Shown here: one piece after another, positions 1-4,656 of the stretch
How positions within the stretch are numbered: position 1 is the first letter of the stretch
Layout: each line of letters begins with the position of its first letter
The notes under the pieces: model-generated
Database searches by the model: none
The model's input: the letters and a program-made list of their open reading frames with translations, nothing else
Told to the model about the DNA's origin: nothing
Program-made: the position numbers and the translations under genes
From: Oopsacas minuta
Lineage: Eukaryota > Animalia > Porifera
DNA: 64,000 nucleotides
Direction of reading: 5' to 3'
Assembly (NCBI GenBank): GCA_024704765.1
Contig: JAKMXF010000302.1
Location: 372,001 to 436,000, forward strand

Positions 1-270
1 CATAAGAATTTATAAGATATGATATTACAAAATTCTAAATTTACTTACATTTGTCCTGTAGACTTTCACTGAATTTGCTAATAGTCAAATGATTGAGTAT
101 TAATTATTATATGCAAAATAGCCTTTTTATTGCATAAATGTTATTGCATGGTTTGTAATCAAAATCAGTTTCAACTGAATACAAGAATACGAATATTGCT
201 CAATTTGTGGTGGGACTTTACCAACTTGTGATTTCAAGTTTCTAAGCAGATAATTACTCTCGTATACAAT

Positions 271-477
271 TTACTGGGAGATAGCCCCTCTTAGCTGACT
301 ATACAAGTAATTGAATTCATTTTTCTGTTGTTCTCTTTTCATGAGCTCCAGCCTCAAGTATTTTTTGTGTGGAAAAGAAATTCTTAATACCGAGCCAATT
401 AAGACAACACTATTCCATTCATTTGCTGAAATATTCAATGAACTTTGACCTGCCAAGCAAGTTATCATATCATTCAT
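271..477 (-). CDS. Possible exon of an unidentified gene running off the left edge
   Basis: 68-aa ATG ORF; a further minus-strand donor-like GTAAGT near position 47 suggests more exons. No recognisable domain and I could not make the phases fit. Confidence 0.25.
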   Translation of the reverse strand: MNDMITCLAGQSSLNISANEWNSVVLIGSVLRISFPHKKYLRLELMKREQQKNEFNYLYSQLRGAISQ

Positions 478-587
478 CTCATTTGGTACAATTAAAATAG
501 AACATTTTATTATTGTTATTATTTACTTACAAATTAATTACATGCATTCAAATCCATAAAAACATTTCAAATAATTAAATAATTATT

Positions 588-3189
588 TCAGTCAAATACA
601 GAATTACGCATAAACTGCATAAACCTCGCTCTATAGAGATAAGGCTGTACTGACGAGATATTTTCTTCTTTAAGAAATCTGATCTTCGTTTTGATGAGAG
701 TTTCTATTTTTTTCTCGATATTATATGGTTGTAGCATATCTATAATGCCAATGTAGAGGAAACAAGATTCTTTTTCGTGTGTCTCTACATTACTAGGTCT
801 CCTGGTAAGAATCTTATCAGCTGGTACCTTGAAGTACCCCTTCCTGAACTGGCTAAACAGGCTCTGAGCTGGGTTTATGATAGGACTAGTAAAAGGTGTA
901 ATACTCGAGGGTGCATGCTCCCTTCGAGCACCATTCCTATACCAATGTAGATTCTGTGGATTGTAATTTACCCATTGGAAACTTGAGTCCACATCTTCTG
1001 GTAAGCTTTGTTCAGATTCGTTAAATATATTATTTTGCATGCTTGTGCTGTATCCAGTATTCTCACCCTCGCTTGTTGCAGTAACTCCAACCAGCAAACT
1101 GTAGTCCATCGCTCCTAGAGACATGTATATATACTTAGATTAATATTTTTCCTATACAATTCATATTCGTGCACTTACCGTGAGTTTGGAGGAATTCTGT
1201 ATCGAGCTCCAACTGACTTAATAAACATTTTTTCGTAGAGATATCCTTAAATTTGAAATAACTATCCATATCCAAATCTTTCATAGTTTTATTCCTTGGT
1301 CTCCCCATACCTCGTTTTACGGTCTGTCTGTTTGTGACAGATCCTTTCAGATCATACCTTTCCTTCAGTATCAACCCTTCTTCGAGATAGAACACATTCT
1401 CCATTATCACTACCATAATGAACTCCTGTTCACTCATGAATCTCAACTTTACCAAGCCATAATATCTTGTCAGTAAAGAATTTGGGTTATCCTTCAGATA
1501 ACGATAATATGGATCTAGATTTCTAATCATGAAATTTAATTCTACGGTGTTGATGGTCTTTACGATGTATTTTTTGTCATATGAGAAGAAGAAGAAACTC
1601 CCACTCTTCCCTTCTGTAAACTTTTCCATCATTGCTGCAGTCTCATTGTCTTGCAGTGGAAAAGATTTCATGAATTCTCCTTCATCTATTCCTCTCAAAT
1701 CTCTCAGGTTTTTGAAGACAAGAGGTGAAAAGTTAATAAACTCAAACTTATGGTACATGAAGGGTGCTGGTATTTGTAGTGTCCTAATTTCGTGTCTCTT
1801 CATGCTCATTGATTTCTGTATGACCTGATCTATTGTTATCTAACATGCAAATTATAATAATAAAATCCGCTAAAGTTTTAAATAAATATATTGACTTACA
1901 TGATGTTGGAAAGTACCATGACTATCACCGGCTATTTGTGACTGTGCAGTTTTCGCAGAATCCAGAATAGAATAGTTTATACAAACAACTGTAAGTCTTC
2001 TCAACTCGCTATTAAACATGTACTCTACCAATGCCTCATTCTCAGAGTTGATTAGAGTACTCCGCTCGTCGCTGCCTGTACGTGTTTTGCCCTGGGTGCT
2101 TGATGTAGAACGACTTTTCCTACCAATTTCTCCTGTCCTATTCCTTGCTCTTGTGTTTACCTTGTTCTCCATTGCGAACTTATTTTTACGTGCAGTTCGA
2201 TTTTTAGTATAAATGGGATACACCCATGCAACTAGTATTATACATCCTCTGGTTGAGTGTAGAAGAGAATAGATATAAGTTAGCGCTACTTGGAAATATT
2301 CAATTGCTCCAATTGCTCCATCATGGTAGAATCCGAAAGATTGCTCGGCCTCATTTCTCAGGACATAAATGAGTATTAAATCGATTATCCATATTACTAA
2401 TGCAACAACCCATTCTACTCCCAATCCAAATAACATCCCTAGACTTAATTTCGCTATATTACCCTTGAAATCTGGACTGAAAAGTGCGACTTTCTTCATG
2501 ATATAAAGCACTCGAATTGTTATAACCAATCCAAAGCAAAACATCACGGAGGTAGGCAGGAAATATATTAAAATAGAAGTTATAGTGTAAGATGTTAGGT
2601 CAGCTACATTCACCCAGCAGAAGAAGAACATTGACATTCCATACGGTTGCCATTCAGTCAATGGTAAAATAGTGAATAGGATAGTTATTACTAAGCTAGG
2701 TATCCATACAGCCGTATGATAGTACTTAATATATGACCCGTGTAGTCGAAATGGACGCCTTACAGCCAGCAACAAATCAACTGCAAAAATAATGTTCCAA
2801 GTATACCCTGATAACATACCAAATTCTATAGCAGCTGAATAAGGTTGGCAAGCGTACTGAAATACTCTCAATTCCTCTTTAAACAGCTGATCATAAGATG
2901 CATGACGACAGAAGAACACAACATGAGCTGTACTTACTATTAAATCTGAAAAGACTCGACCCACAACTAAACTAGCTGGATGCTTGCGTAAAGGTTTATC
3001 TATCAGCAAAAATGTAATAGTAGCAAATAAACTGACCATGCTGAATAAGCTACCGATGAAGTAGATCAACGTAAAATACCTATAACTATCTTCATTGAAG
3101 AGGTCTCCTAGTGTAGAGTTTAGTTTTATTTTATGGCTAACATTGAAAGGGATTGATGGAATTCCTTCTCCAAACTTGATTATATTCAT
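588..3189 (-). CDS. GPCR-PIP kinase fusion (7TM receptor-like domain + phosphatidylinositol phosphate kinase), 3 exons
   Basis: Exon 1 (3189-1900) has ~7 hydrophobic helices. Intron 1899-1840 (GTAAGT..TTAG, phase 0) joins in frame to exon 2 (1839-1179) with GKSGSFFFFSYD, YIVKT, RYDLKGS, KDLD. Intron 1178-1115 (GTAAGT..CTAG, phase 1) joins to exon 3 (1114-588) with MDYSLLVGV and GIIDMLQPY. Confidence 0.9.
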
Positions 3190-3382
3190 ATCCTCTCAAT
3201 ATTCCTTACCTTTTTATCCAAAATTGTTTTTATCTCGAGTTCATCCGCTAAAATGACCTGTACTAACTTAAATTATCACTCAAGCCTATTAATATTTATG
3301 GCTATGGCATTAGCTAATATCATATTTCTTAAAAGGAAATGTATATCATTAGTCTATATTATCTAACCCTTCTTTGCAATAG

Positions 3383-3877
3383 ACGTCCCTCTCAGAGGGG
3401 ACAACATCGAGAGAAGCAGGAAGTTCTGGATCTTCAACTACACGAATAGATGAAGAGGGAGGAGATAATGGTACCATGCAGGTTATGTACCATGACGTCA
3501 CAACATGGACACACGAACCTGAGCATACCAGATCTCTCGTTATAGGCAAGTTTCTTTCAAAACAGACTTACTAACCTAGATTTATGTTCTTATAATCTTT
3601 CTAGCAATTAAACAACCAGTTGGATTTGATACATCTGTTATTTTGAATATTTCAGTTCAAGATAATTGCTATACAATTGAATTTCCTTTGTTACCTGGCT
3701 CAGACCCGATTGAAGCAAATTACTGTATGTTCTCTATACCAGAGCCTAACGGAGAATTACTGCAAATGGAGACTGAAATTCGTAACCAATCACTAACGAG
3801 GTTAATTTGTGATATTTTAATTATTAATATCTTAAGTATTTATGTAAAATTAAAGAGATTATTTTCTTCTAACGTAA
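3383..3877 (+). CDS. Small uncharacterised spliced ORF; 5' end unresolved
   Basis: Open frames 3383-3545, 3605-3800 and 3856-3877 are phase-compatible via a GC-AG intron (3546-3604, AG|GCAAGT) and a GT-AG intron (3801-3855). No known domain. Confidence 0.3.
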
Positions 3878-4032
3878 ACAACTTATCCGATAACATTACA
3901 TGTTGTGTTACATGATTTGTCTCCATTTACGCGAATGTACTTTCTATTGTACCATGAGGTCAGATATCATAGTAATCTCATCTTTGTTCACGGCATACAC
4001 TAGTGCATTATATCATCTACAGCTAAAGTAAA

Positions 4033-4656
4033 ATGGAAATAAAACGTAAAATTTCTCTGCAACAAGCAAGTAAAACTGACAATACTCCTTTAATTCAACA
4101 CATTTTAACAATTTCTACGTCTGATATTGACAACCAAGATTCTGAAGGCAGTACTGCATTACACTATGCTGTTTCAAATTCTAATTTGAAATTAGTGGAA
4201 TTTTTGCTCAAGAAAGGAGCTGATCCAAATCTACGAACAGTAACCGATCTCAAAACACCATTACATCTTGCAATTGATATTCACCAATCTTACTATGCCT
4301 CTCCATCTCTGGAGCAGAGTAAAATAATCCGTATGACTCAACAAAAACATATTATGATACTCTTACTTGAGCACGATGCTTACCCTTTCTTCTCTGATAT
4401 AAATGGAGCAACTTTCTCAGCTTTACTCAATAAATTTTACAAATTGAATGAATTATTTCTTAAATTTCCATCACTCTTACCTCCAACCAAATTAAGAACT
4501 CTTGCAGCGCAGAAGATCATTACCAGTGAGCTCTTAGAAAAAATAACCCCTCTCATTCCAAAGAAACTTAGGAATTTCATTACATTCCATATGCCCATTT
4601 CTGAAACCCCGAAAATTATCTTTACAGAAATGACCTCTGCTAGTTATGTGCATTAG
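4033..4656 (+). CDS. Ankyrin-repeat protein with C-terminal SOCS-box-like motif (ASB-like)
   Basis: Ankyrin motifs GSTALHYAVSNSNLKLVEFLLKKGADPN and KTPLHLAID; C-terminal PTKLRTLAAQKII...IPKKLRNFI resembles a BC-box/cullin box. Confidence 0.75.
   Translation: MEIKRKISLQQASKTDNTPLIQHILTISTSDIDNQDSEGSTALHYAVSNSNLKLVEFLLKKGADPNLRTVTDLKTPLHLAIDIHQSYYASPSLEQSKIIRMTQQKHIMILLLEHDAYPFFSDINGATFSALLNKFYKLNELFLKFPSLLPPTKLRTLAAQKIITSELLEKITPLIPKKLRNFITFHMPISETPKIIFTEMTSASYVH

What the first reader, a model, noticed from the sequence alone, without database searches (positions are those of the whole stretch)
588..3189. 7TM receptor fused to a complete PIP kinase in an animal-like genome
Seen: three exons splice in frame through two ~60-nt canonical introns into one ~830-aa ORF with a 7TM domain, a basic/Ser-rich linker and a PIPK with all key motifs (VKT, DLKGS, KDLD, MDYSL, IID). 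The linker has LRRLTVVCINYSI, an LR-x9-[S]I spacing reminiscent of the LRxGI linker I recall from GPCR-PIPKs. Known: such fusions occur in oomycetes, Dictyostelium (RpkA) and other unicellular eukaryotes, are absent from bilaterians and, as I recall, are reported in animals only from sponges. Inference: a one-protein receptor-to-phosphoinositide signalling module whose ligand and lipid product are unknown here.
Basis: partly seen in the sequence, partly recalled or inferred. Interest (0 to 1): 0.8.

Follow-up and report, generated by a model that had tools for sequence, protein, structure and literature searches.

The report
Glass-sponge receptor fused to lipid kinase
This glass-sponge gene really does encode one protein that joins a seven-helix membrane receptor to a phosphoinositide kinase, but it belongs to the old GPCR-PIPK family already reported from sponges, so it is a sound but expected find.

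Summary
On the minus strand, exons 3189-1900, 1839-1179 and 1114-588 join through a 60-nt and a 64-nt GT..AG intron into an 825-aa frame. Contigs of one run, RNA by inference, skip exactly these two introns, and one contig joins the receptor exon to the kinase exon. Six other glass-sponge assemblies keep the same introns, phases, open frame and neighbouring genes.

The N-terminal half is a GPCR: Pfam 7tm_2, an AlphaFold model at pLDDT 83 with seven helices, and only GPCRs among the Foldseek matches. The C-terminal half is a complete PIPK domain.

A profile of the receptor half alone finds GPCR-PIPKs of Oscarella, Sycon, Capsaspora and a choanoflagellate. The linker motif LRRLTVVCINYSI aligns with Amphimedon's LRKDVIFCINYGI, with Ser for Gly in all seven glass sponges. 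In the tree the glass sponges sit inside a sponge clade, beside a probably demosponge group.

Papers from 2011, 2018 and 2025 already report GPCR-PIPKs in sponges and in no other animals. This is therefore a new, glass-sponge member of a known kind. Ligand, substrate and product remain untested; the activation loop resembles type I (PI4P 5-kinase). A word search of this scan's earlier notes found no such report.

The parts
588..3189 (-). Whole coding region of the GPCR-PIPK gene (three exons, 825 aa)
   Evidence: Spliced translation is open; Pfam finds both domains; spliced contigs in run X4; six orthologs have the same structure.
1900..3189 (-). Exon 1: short N-terminus, 7TM domain, basic/Ser-rich linker and LR-x9-SI helix (residues 1-430)
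   Evidence: the six closest database proteins P0001-P0006 are exon-1-sized ORF calls.
2134..3093 (-). Seven-helix receptor domain, residues 33-352: TM1 33-63, TM2 72-95, TM3 107-144, TM4 150-174, ECL2 hairpin 183-193, TM5 198-234, TM6 245-283, TM7 with its cytoplasmic extension 292-352
   Evidence: AlphaFold2 with a 44-sequence alignment gives pLDDT 83 and pTM 0.80. All of at least 500 Foldseek PDB matches are GPCRs, with adhesion class on top. Pfam 7tm_2.
2848..2850 (-). Cys114 at the top of TM3, one half of the likely extracellular disulfide
   Evidence: One of only two invariant columns in 44 GPCR-PIPK-type 7TM sequences.
2617..2619 (-). Cys191 in the ECL2 hairpin, the other half of the likely disulfide
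   Evidence: Invariant column; lies in strand 191-193 of the model.
2041..2205 (-). Basic/Ser-rich linker, residues 329-383, disordered after about residue 352, with an invariant STSS.Q cluster (361-366)
   Evidence: pLDDT below 50 for residues 360-388. Only 37-55% identity among orthologs, but S361, T362, S363, S364 and Q366 are invariant.
1966..2004 (-). LR-x9-SI motif (LRRLTVVCINYSI, residues 396-408), the counterpart of the family's LRxGI motif, inside helix 384-419
   Evidence: near-invariant in seven orthologs, dN 0.03-0.13; the same motif in PIPK-bearing hits; Amphimedon I1FNC1; the helix is.
1840..1899 (-). Intron 1 (60 nt, phase 0), the splice that creates the fusion
   Evidence: Run X4 contig record 15 skips 1840-1899 exactly, CT..AC on the plus strand. 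Same position and phase in six orthologs, lengths 55-82 nt.
1179..1839 (-). Exon 2: PIPK N-lobe and start of the C-lobe, with GKSGS (1597-1611), IVKT Lys (1555-1563) and DLKGS (1339-1353)
   Evidence: Pfam PIP5K at 142 bits; PDB matches to PIP4K2A/B and PIP5K1A; motif positions.
1115..1178 (-). Intron 2 (64 nt, phase 1)
   Evidence: Run X4 contig record 14 skips it; the Pfam profile continues across it; conserved in six orthologs.
588..1114 (-). Exon 3: rest of the PIPK C-lobe, with MDYSL (1095-1109), a variable insert, IID, the activation loop and the stop codon
   Evidence: Pfam PIP5K at 78 bits; alignment to PIP5K1A structures.
630..749 (-). Activation loop region, residues 773-812 (GIIDMLQPYNIEKKIETLIK...ISSVQPYLY), with the di-lysine and a type-I-like Glu
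   Evidence: Aligned to zebrafish PIP5K1A as [21 protein letters not shown]; invariant or near-invariant in the orthologs.

Best explanation
This is the glass-sponge ortholog of the ancient eukaryotic GPCR-PIPK family ('type IV PIPK'; Dictyostelium RpkA, Phytophthora GKs, Amphimedon I1FNC1). One mRNA encodes a single 825-aa membrane protein made of five parts. First comes a short glycosylatable N-terminus. Second is a seven-helix receptor of the adhesion/secretin/cAMP-receptor kind with a TM3-ECL2 disulfide. Third is a disordered basic linker carrying a conserved Ser/Thr cluster. Fourth is a conserved amphipathic helix, LR-x9-SI. Fifth is a complete phosphatidylinositol-phosphate kinase domain. 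Shown here: the architecture, the splicing into one reading frame, purifying selection on every part, descent within sponges that follows the species tree, and intact catalytic motifs. Inferred: a signal sensed by the 7TM domain changes the position or activity of the tethered kinase at the membrane. This would make a phosphoinositide locally, most likely PI(4,5)P2 from PI4P because the activation loop carries the type-I-like KK-x-Glu. The receptor would thus couple to lipid signalling directly rather than only through G proteins. By analogy with RpkA it may act on endosomal or phagosomal membranes.
For: Gene model and motifs. Both Pfam domains, with the PIP5K profile continuing across intron 2. 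Both introns are removed exactly in contigs of run X4, and one contig joins the 7TM exon to the PIPK exon, while X1-X3 from the same sample keep the introns. Six orthologous loci have identical intron positions and phases, variable intron lengths, open 817-827-aa frames and conserved Ank/NHL neighbours. dN is far below dS in every region and lowest in the LR-x9-SI helix and the PIPK. A profile of the 7TM half alone finds 132 proteins, of which 62 carry a PIPK and most carry LR-x9-GI. The best named hits are Oscarella pearsei, Sycon ciliatum, Capsaspora A0A0D2WMD5 (a listed GPCR-PIPK) and Salpingoeca kvevrii. Single BLASTP alignments span both domains, for example residues 45-819 against Oscarella 25-723 at E 6e-84. 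The tree places the glass sponges inside the sponge clade, next to a clade that includes Em0019g164a (probably Ephydatia, judged from the identifier). GPCR fold. Activation-loop alignment to PIP5K1A (KKIE against KKLE). Literature: PMC5784254, PMC12716839 and PMC3206951. In the last, RpkA sits on phagosomes, its loss lowers PIP and PIP2, and its substrates and products are unknown.
Against: No biochemical data exist for this protein or, according to PMC3206951, for the kinase domain of any GPCR-PIPK. The kinase N-lobe scores higher against type II PIP4Ks (74 bits) than against type I (59 bits), so the substrate call from the activation loop alone is weak. The literal Gly of the LRxGI motif is Ser here. 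The stem branch leading to the glass sponges is long (1.4 changes per site), so function may have shifted. Run X4 is not recorded as RNA; that is inferred from the spliced contigs and the adaptor type. The placement of the PIPK domain against type I-III outgroups was not tested.
Confidence: 0.88

Rival explanations
1. There are two adjacent genes, a 7TM-only receptor ending at the stop at 1870-1872 and a separate PIPK, and the fusion is an artefact of reading through the sequence.
For: The exon-1 ORF closes with a stop 27 nt into intron 1. ORF-style public gene calls list three separate proteins at every orthologous locus. Assembled contigs drop rare variants, so a minor intron-retaining isoform is not excluded.
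Against: An X4 contig removes the 60-nt intron exactly and joins the two ORFs in frame. The intron position and phase 0 are kept in seven species although the length varies from 55 to 82 nt. Full-length fused proteins exist in Oscarella, Sycon and Capsaspora, and each aligns to the window protein in one stretch spanning both domains.
Confidence: 0.02
2. The fusion arose independently in glass sponges: an unrelated 7TM joined to an ordinary PIP5K, resembling GPCR-PIPKs only in layout.
For: PMC12716839 argues that kinase domains fused to 7TM domains repeatedly in eukaryotes (GPCR-TK and TKL). The glass-sponge stem branch is long. The motif has Ser rather than Gly.
Against: The 7TM half alone retrieves GPCR-PIPKs as its best hits outside glass sponges. 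The linker helix matches Amphimedon's residue by residue. The tree follows the holozoan species tree.
Confidence: 0.03
3. The gene comes from a protist contaminant or symbiont in the sponge assembly, not from the animal.
For: GPCR-PIPKs are far more common in protists (PMC5784254). Some of the orthologous loci come from samples labelled as metagenomes.
Against: The same neighbours (Ank, NHL, Sdh_cyt) flank the gene in seven assemblies, on contigs up to 1.57 Mb. The short GTAAGT..YAG introns are the same kind in all seven loci. The protein lies inside the sponge clade next to the probable demosponges, as the species tree predicts. Read depth matches the flanking DNA in the DNA runs.
Confidence: 0.02
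4. It is a true fused family member, but the kinase domain acts mainly as a scaffold (for example by binding V-ATPase, as the RpkA PIPK domain does) and not as a regulated lipid kinase.
For: The RpkA PIPK domain alone pulls down V-ATPase subunits, and no catalytic activity has been shown for any GPCR-PIPK (PMC3206951).
Against: GKSGS, the IVKT Lys, DLKGS, MDYSL, IID and the di-lysine activation loop are all intact and invariant in seven orthologs. Loss of RpkA lowers PIP and PIP2 levels (PMC3206951).
Confidence: 0.1

Closest known systems
Amphimedon queenslandica GPCR-PIPK (UniProt I1FNC1, 824 aa; van den Hoogen et al. 2018, PMC5784254)
   Same: It has the same layout and almost the same length (824 against 825 aa). 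Its PIPK domain starts at about residue 419, against about 431 here. The linker helix matches closely (LRKDVIFCINYGILDAVK against LRRLTVVCINYSILDSAK). Both share 7TM landmarks such as MFFFCW and HS.RG. Both are from sponges.
   Different: It comes from a different sponge class (Demospongiae against Hexactinellida). Gly in the GI pair is Ser here. The glass-sponge lineage sits on a long stem branch. I could not align the full Amphimedon sequence, because only its first part is printed in the supplement.
Dictyostelium discoideum RpkA (PMC3206951)
   Same: A 7TM receptor with a C-terminal PIPK in one protein. It belongs to the same family by the criteria of PMC5784254.
   Different: It is an amoebozoan protein and only distantly related. 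Its endosomal and phagosomal location, its V-ATPase binding and its effect on PIP and PIP2 levels are shown for RpkA only. None of these was tested for the sponge protein.
Capsaspora owczarzaki A0A0D2WMD5 and craspedid choanoflagellate GPCR PIPKs (PMC5784254, PMC12716839)
   Same: The alignment is full-length and collinear (residues 40-821 against 41-829, 24% identity, E 3e-68). The motif sits in the same place and also has a non-Gly small residue (LRKDIMLCTTWAI). In the tree these proteins branch just outside the sponge clade.
   Different: They come from unicellular relatives of animals. Identity is only about 24-27%.
Type I PIP5K (for example zebrafish PIP5K1A, PDB 4TZ7 and 5E3S) and type II PIP4K (PDB 1BO1, 2YBX)
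   Same: The same kinase fold and catalytic motifs. The activation loop resembles type I (KKIE against KKLE). The N-lobe scores slightly better against type II.
   Different: These are soluble peripheral enzymes with no 7TM domain and no LRxGI helix. According to PMC5784254, GPCR-PIPK kinase domains form their own clade (type IV).
Adhesion and secretin GPCRs (Pfam 7tm_2; for example GPR56, PDB 7SF8)
   Same: They are the best structural and Pfam matches for the 7TM bundle, and they share the TM3-ECL2 cysteine pair.
   Different: The extracellular N-terminus here is only about 32-37 residues, so there is no room for a GAIN/GPS or hormone-binding domain. Sequence identity is 13-18%.

Membership tests
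GPCR-PIPK (type IV PIPK; RpkA/GK family) | N-terminal seven-transmembrane receptor domain | tested here: met
   Pfam 7tm_2 at 35.4 bits, above the 20.6 cut-off. The AlphaFold2 model at pLDDT 83 has seven long helices and an ECL2 hairpin. All Foldseek PDB matches are GPCRs.
GPCR-PIPK (type IV PIPK; RpkA/GK family) | C-terminal PIPK catalytic domain with intact catalytic motifs (G-loop, catalytic Lys, DLKGS, MDYSL, IID, di-lysine activation loop) | tested here: met
   Pfam PIP5K at 142 and 78 bits, covering profile positions 5-287 of 288. All motifs are present and invariant in seven orthologs.
GPCR-PIPK (type IV PIPK; RpkA/GK family) | Both domains in one polypeptide, made from one transcript | tested here: met
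   An X4 contig joins 1900|1839 in frame. Intron phase is conserved in six orthologs. The protein itself was not observed.
GPCR-PIPK (type IV PIPK; RpkA/GK family) | Conserved LR(x)9GI helix in the linker between the 7TM and PIPK domains | tested here: met
   It is present as the variant LR(x)9SI (LRRLTVVCINYSI, residues 396-408), at the same place and with the same spacing. It aligns with Amphimedon LRKDVIFCINYGI and with P0032 LRRDVMYCINYGI. Other members also have small-residue variants, such as Capsaspora ...WAI. PMC5784254 reports that 9 of 60 non-oomycete members lack the motif altogether. The literal Gly is not present.
GPCR-PIPK (type IV PIPK; RpkA/GK family) | 7TM domain homologous to that of other GPCR-PIPKs, so that the 7TM alone finds family members (PMC12716839) | tested here: met
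   A profile of exon 1 only was searched against 1.84 billion proteins. The top hits outside glass sponges are 650-900-aa proteins matched at their N-termini, and 62 of the 137 proteins then on file (the 132 hits plus the glass-sponge orthologs) carry a PIPK. Named hits are Oscarella, Sycon, Capsaspora and S. kvevrii.
GPCR-PIPK (type IV PIPK; RpkA/GK family) | [quoted passage not shown] | not tested
   No type I-III outgroups were in the tree. There are only indirect hints. Beyond the sponge clade, hits to ordinary PIP5Ks fall from about E 1e-84 to 1e-46 and cover only the kinase part. Affinities to PDB enzymes are mixed between type I and type II.
GPCR-PIPK (type IV PIPK; RpkA/GK family) | Lipid kinase activity regulated by the receptor | not testable with these tools
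   This has not been established for any family member (PMC3206951, PMC12716839).
Type I PIP5K (PI4P 5-kinase) | Soluble PIPK whose activation loop carries the type-I specificity Glu after the di-lysine | tested here: inconclusive
   The Glu is present (KKIE aligned to KKLE of 5E3S and 4TZ7). However, the N-lobe scores higher against type II and the protein is membrane-embedded. I use this only as a hint about the substrate, not for filing the protein. The role of that single residue is recalled from Kunz et al. 2002, which is cited in PMC5262455 but which I did not read.
Adhesion GPCR (class B2) | Extracellular GAIN/GPS autoproteolysis domain before TM1 | tested here: not met
   TM1 starts at about residue 33, and Pfam finds no extracellular domain. 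The resemblance is confined to the 7TM bundle.

The most novel reading that the evidence does not exclude
GPCR-PIPK may be a sensor of phagosomes or endosomes, as RpkA is in Dictyostelium, that animals kept only where feeding still relies on intracellular digestion. It would then be retained in all four sponge classes and lost once in the ancestor of animals with a gut. The Ser-for-Gly change and the long branch in glass sponges would mark a re-tuning for their syncytial tissue. Its presence in sponges and absence elsewhere would also be a small rare-genomic-change argument about early animal branching.
Probability: 0.12. Interest if true: 0.55.

Novelty: new member of a known kind. Interest (0 to 1): 0.25.

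Why it matters
The result places the GPCR-PIPK fusion in glass sponges. With Amphimedon (and probably Ephydatia), Oscarella and Sycon, it now covers all four sponge classes. The fusion was therefore in the last common ancestor of sponges and, by parsimony, of animals, and was lost in the other animal lineages, as published work already proposes. The report provides a checked gene model, evidence for the transcript and seven orthologs for a family in which no ligand, substrate or product is known in any organism. It also shows that ORF-style gene calls in public collections split these fusions into pieces, so surveys based on such calls will undercount them. It opens no new question.

Tried and rejected
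Six steps led nowhere or were limited.

(1) Word-based protein searches with exon 1, alone and as a seven-sequence profile, found only the six glass-sponge orthologs. The 0.55-1.75 length window excludes proteins longer than 752 aa, so this blank says nothing about the wider family.

(2) The ESM Atlas feature search gave only generic GPCR clusters (cAMP-receptor-like, GPR143, GPR157, Frizzled) at 0.90-0.93 and no fusion cluster.

(3) The first AlphaFold run, with seven sequences, gave pLDDT 46 and was not used. The 44-sequence alignment solved this.

(4) The supplementary files of PMC12716839 are not held. I could not check whether its sponge GPCR-PIPK set already includes the Oopsacas protein, although that proteome was in its sampling.

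(5) dN/dS ratios are only indicative, because dS is saturated (above 1 or undefined) between these species.

(6) The spliced 825-aa protein has no reference form, so it could not be given to the look-up, fold or search tools as one piece. The last word search, with the demosponge-like P0017, did not return a fused public model of this gene, which is not evidence that none exists.

Readings rejected: two separate genes, convergent fusion, and protist contamination (see the rival explanations).
Full report
OBSERVATION

Reading the minus strand of 1-4200 and listing ORFs shows three ORFs in a row: 3189-1870, 1809-1135 and 1124-588. They join through two short introns with canonical ends. Intron 1 is 1899-1840 (60 nt, GTAAGT..TTAG). 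Intron 2 is 1178-1115 (64 nt, GTAAGT..CTAG). The spliced sequence is 2478 nt and translates to 825 aa with one terminal stop. An in-frame TGA at 3198-3196 lies just upstream of the ATG at 3189. No paralog lies elsewhere in the window.

DOMAINS

Pfam finds 7tm_2 (35.4 bits against a cut-off of 20.6) on residues 39-269. It finds PIP5K on exon 2 (142 bits, profile positions 5-155) and on exon 3 (78 bits, positions 159-287). The kinase profile therefore runs on across intron 2.

IS THE FUSION TRANSCRIBED?

Four public runs from one sample hold the stretch. When they were laid on 400-3400, X1-X3 were collinear with the genome; their loose ends look like Nextera adaptors. X4, whose loose ends look like TruSeq adaptors, has contigs that skip exactly 1114-1177 and 1840-1899. 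Both skips are CT..AC on the plus strand, which is GT..AG on the gene's strand. Record 15 (1027 nt) covers 1457-1839|1900-2543 and so joins the receptor exon to the kinase exon in frame.

X4 is not recorded as RNA. I infer that it is RNA from the clean removal of both introns, which is absent from the three other runs of the same sample. Contigs cannot exclude a rare intron-retaining isoform.

COMPARATIVE SUPPORT

The closest database proteins (56-64% identity) are six exon-1-sized ORF calls. At each of their loci, the 7TM ORF is followed by two PIP5K ORFs. A divergent ankyrin gene lies upstream and an NHL gene downstream. The window has the matching ankyrin ORF at 4033-4656 (+).

Spliced models built for all six loci have introns at the same two positions and phases (0 and 1), with GTAAGT or GTAGGT donors and YAG acceptors. 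Intron lengths are 55-82 nt and 56-368 nt, and the open frames are 817-827 aa.

Identity to the window protein is 62-67% in the 7TM domain, 37-55% in the basic linker, 75-94% around the LR motif and 71-76% in the kinase. dN is well below dS in every region, although dS is saturated, and it is lowest in the LR helix (0.03-0.13) and the kinase (0.16-0.21).

FAMILY MEMBERSHIP

Word searches reached no further than the six orthologs, so I ran the exhaustive profile search with the 7TM-plus-linker alignment. It returned 132 proteins at E of 0.001 or better. Counting the orthologs already on file, 62 of 137 proteins carry a PIPK domain. These include nearly every hit of 600 aa or more, and most have LR-x9-GI between the domains, for example LRRDVMYCINYGI and LRRDVMFCINLGI.

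The named top hits are Oscarella pearsei (728 aa), Sycon ciliatum XP_065187260.1 (889 aa), Capsaspora A0A0D2WMD5 (832 aa, a listed GPCR-PIPK) and Salpingoeca kvevrii (753 aa). More distant named hits come from Pigoraptor, Diplonema, Entosiphon and Diphylleia. Single BLASTP alignments span both domains collinearly: 45-819 against Oscarella 25-723 at E 6e-84, and 40-821 against Capsaspora 41-829 at E 3e-68.

The Amphimedon protein printed in the 2018 supplement (I1FNC1, 824 aa) has LRKDVIFCINYGILDAVK where the window has LRRLTVVCINYSILDSAK. The glass-sponge motif is therefore the true counterpart of LRxGI. Ser replaces Gly in all seven glass sponges.

TREE

I built a quick maximum-likelihood tree of 60 full-length proteins (LG+C20, SH-aLRT support). 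The order is Capsaspora with Pigoraptor, then the choanoflagellate pair, then a sponge clade (support 94) holding Oscarella, Sycon and a group (support 86) made of the seven glass sponges (support 100, stem length 1.4) plus a nine-member unnamed clade (support 99).

A further word search with P0017, a member of that sister clade, found about 100 related clusters. The only named one is Em0019g164a, which I read as Ephydatia muelleri from the identifier prefix; I did not check this. After that clade the hits drop to ordinary fungal and plant PIP5Ks that match only the kinase part. No named protein from a non-sponge animal appears.

Glass sponges next to demosponges is what the species tree predicts, so inheritance looks vertical. 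The tree has no type I-III outgroup and its root is arbitrary.

STRUCTURE

With 44 sequences, AlphaFold2 gives pLDDT 83 and pTM 0.80 for residues 1-430. The model has seven long helices, an ECL2 beta-hairpin, a TM7 that extends to about residue 352, a disordered stretch at 360-388 and a helix at 384-419 over the LR-x9-SI motif.

All of the 500 or more Foldseek PDB matches are GPCRs. Adhesion receptors come first (GPR56, ADGRD1, GPR133), followed by Frizzled, secretin-class and class A receptors.

The only invariant columns in the 44-sequence alignment are C114 and C191, at the top of TM3 and in ECL2. That is where GPCRs carry their usual extracellular disulfide (general knowledge). TM1 starts at about residue 33, so there is no room for a GAIN or hormone-binding domain.

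KINASE

The activation loop aligns to zebrafish PIP5K1A as IGIIDMLQPYNIEKKIETLIK against [21 protein letters not shown]. It keeps the di-lysine and the following Glu. Swapping activation loops swaps substrate specificity between type I and type II enzymes (Kunz 2000 and 2002, as cited in PMC5262455). That this one Glu is the switch is my recollection of Kunz 2002, which I did not read. The N-lobe, in contrast, scores higher against type II PIP4K2A (74 bits) than against PIP5K1A (59 bits). PI4P 5-kinase activity is therefore the likeliest reading but is weakly based.

HOW IT PROBABLY WORKS

Shown: one transcript; one reading frame under constraint along its whole length; a GPCR-fold receptor; a conserved linker helix; and a catalytically complete PIPK.

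Inferred: a change in the receptor's conformation alters the position or activity of the tethered kinase at the membrane, giving local phosphoinositide synthesis, probably of PI(4,5)P2. The LR helix may lie on the membrane like a helix 8, as PMC5784254 proposes.

In Dictyostelium, RpkA sits on endosomes and maturing phagosomes, binds V-ATPase through its PIPK domain, and its loss lowers PIP and PIP2 levels. Its substrates and products are nevertheless unknown (PMC3206951).

WHAT IS KNOWN

Riyahi et al. 2011 (PMC3206951) already noted a sponge homolog. Van den Hoogen et al. 2018 (PMC5784254) list one Amphimedon GPCR-PIPK and none in other animals. [quoted passage not shown]

Earlier scan notes call this genome a glass sponge, and one names Oopsacas minuta. 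The mix of library types seen fits that genome paper's methods, but I did not verify the species. I found no text that describes the glass-sponge ortholog itself.

VERDICT

This is a new, hexactinellid member of a known family, in the one animal phylum where it is expected. Interest is modest. A word search of this scan's earlier notes returned no report of a PIP-kinase fusion.

Noticed in passing
L004:8277-9123 (+): A second, truncated copy of the gene lies just after the NHL neighbour. It starts in the linker, keeps the LR motif, intron 1 and the kinase N-lobe up to ...RERYD, and then jumps to IIDMLQPYN.... It has no 7TM domain and no DLKGS-MDYSL core, and a stop follows the deletion. It looks like a recent, decayed partial duplicate.
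   Followed up: partly
window 4033-4656 (+); L001 and L004-L008 flanks: The gene order Ank (divergent), GPCR-PIPK, NHL-repeat gene and then an Sdh_cyt gene is kept across the glass-sponge assemblies, although synonymous sites are saturated.
   Followed up: partly
window 2092-2109 (-), residues 361-366: Within the otherwise fast-changing basic linker, S361, T362, S363, S364 and Q366 are invariant in all seven orthologs. This could be a phosphorylation cluster of the kind that regulates GPCR tails.
   Followed up: no
window 3190-3410 (-): The X4 contig runs collinear for at least 220 nt upstream of the ATG. It passes the in-frame TGA and several upstream ATGs. This is either a long 5' UTR with small upstream ORFs or read-through from the neighbouring gene.
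   Followed up: no
proteins P0157-P0247: About 100 demosponge-like clusters are 600-700 aa and cover only about 76% of the full-length query, so they lack the first part of the receptor. At every glass-sponge locus the fusion is called as three separate proteins. ORF-style calls therefore hide this architecture in public collections.
   Followed up: partly
L008:6016-6383: Intron 2 is 368 nt in this ortholog against 56-73 nt in the other six. I did not examine what was inserted.
   Followed up: no
window 2617-2619 and 2848-2850 (-): C114 and C191 are the only invariant columns across 44 GPCR-PIPK-type receptor domains from sponges to excavates.
   Followed up: partly
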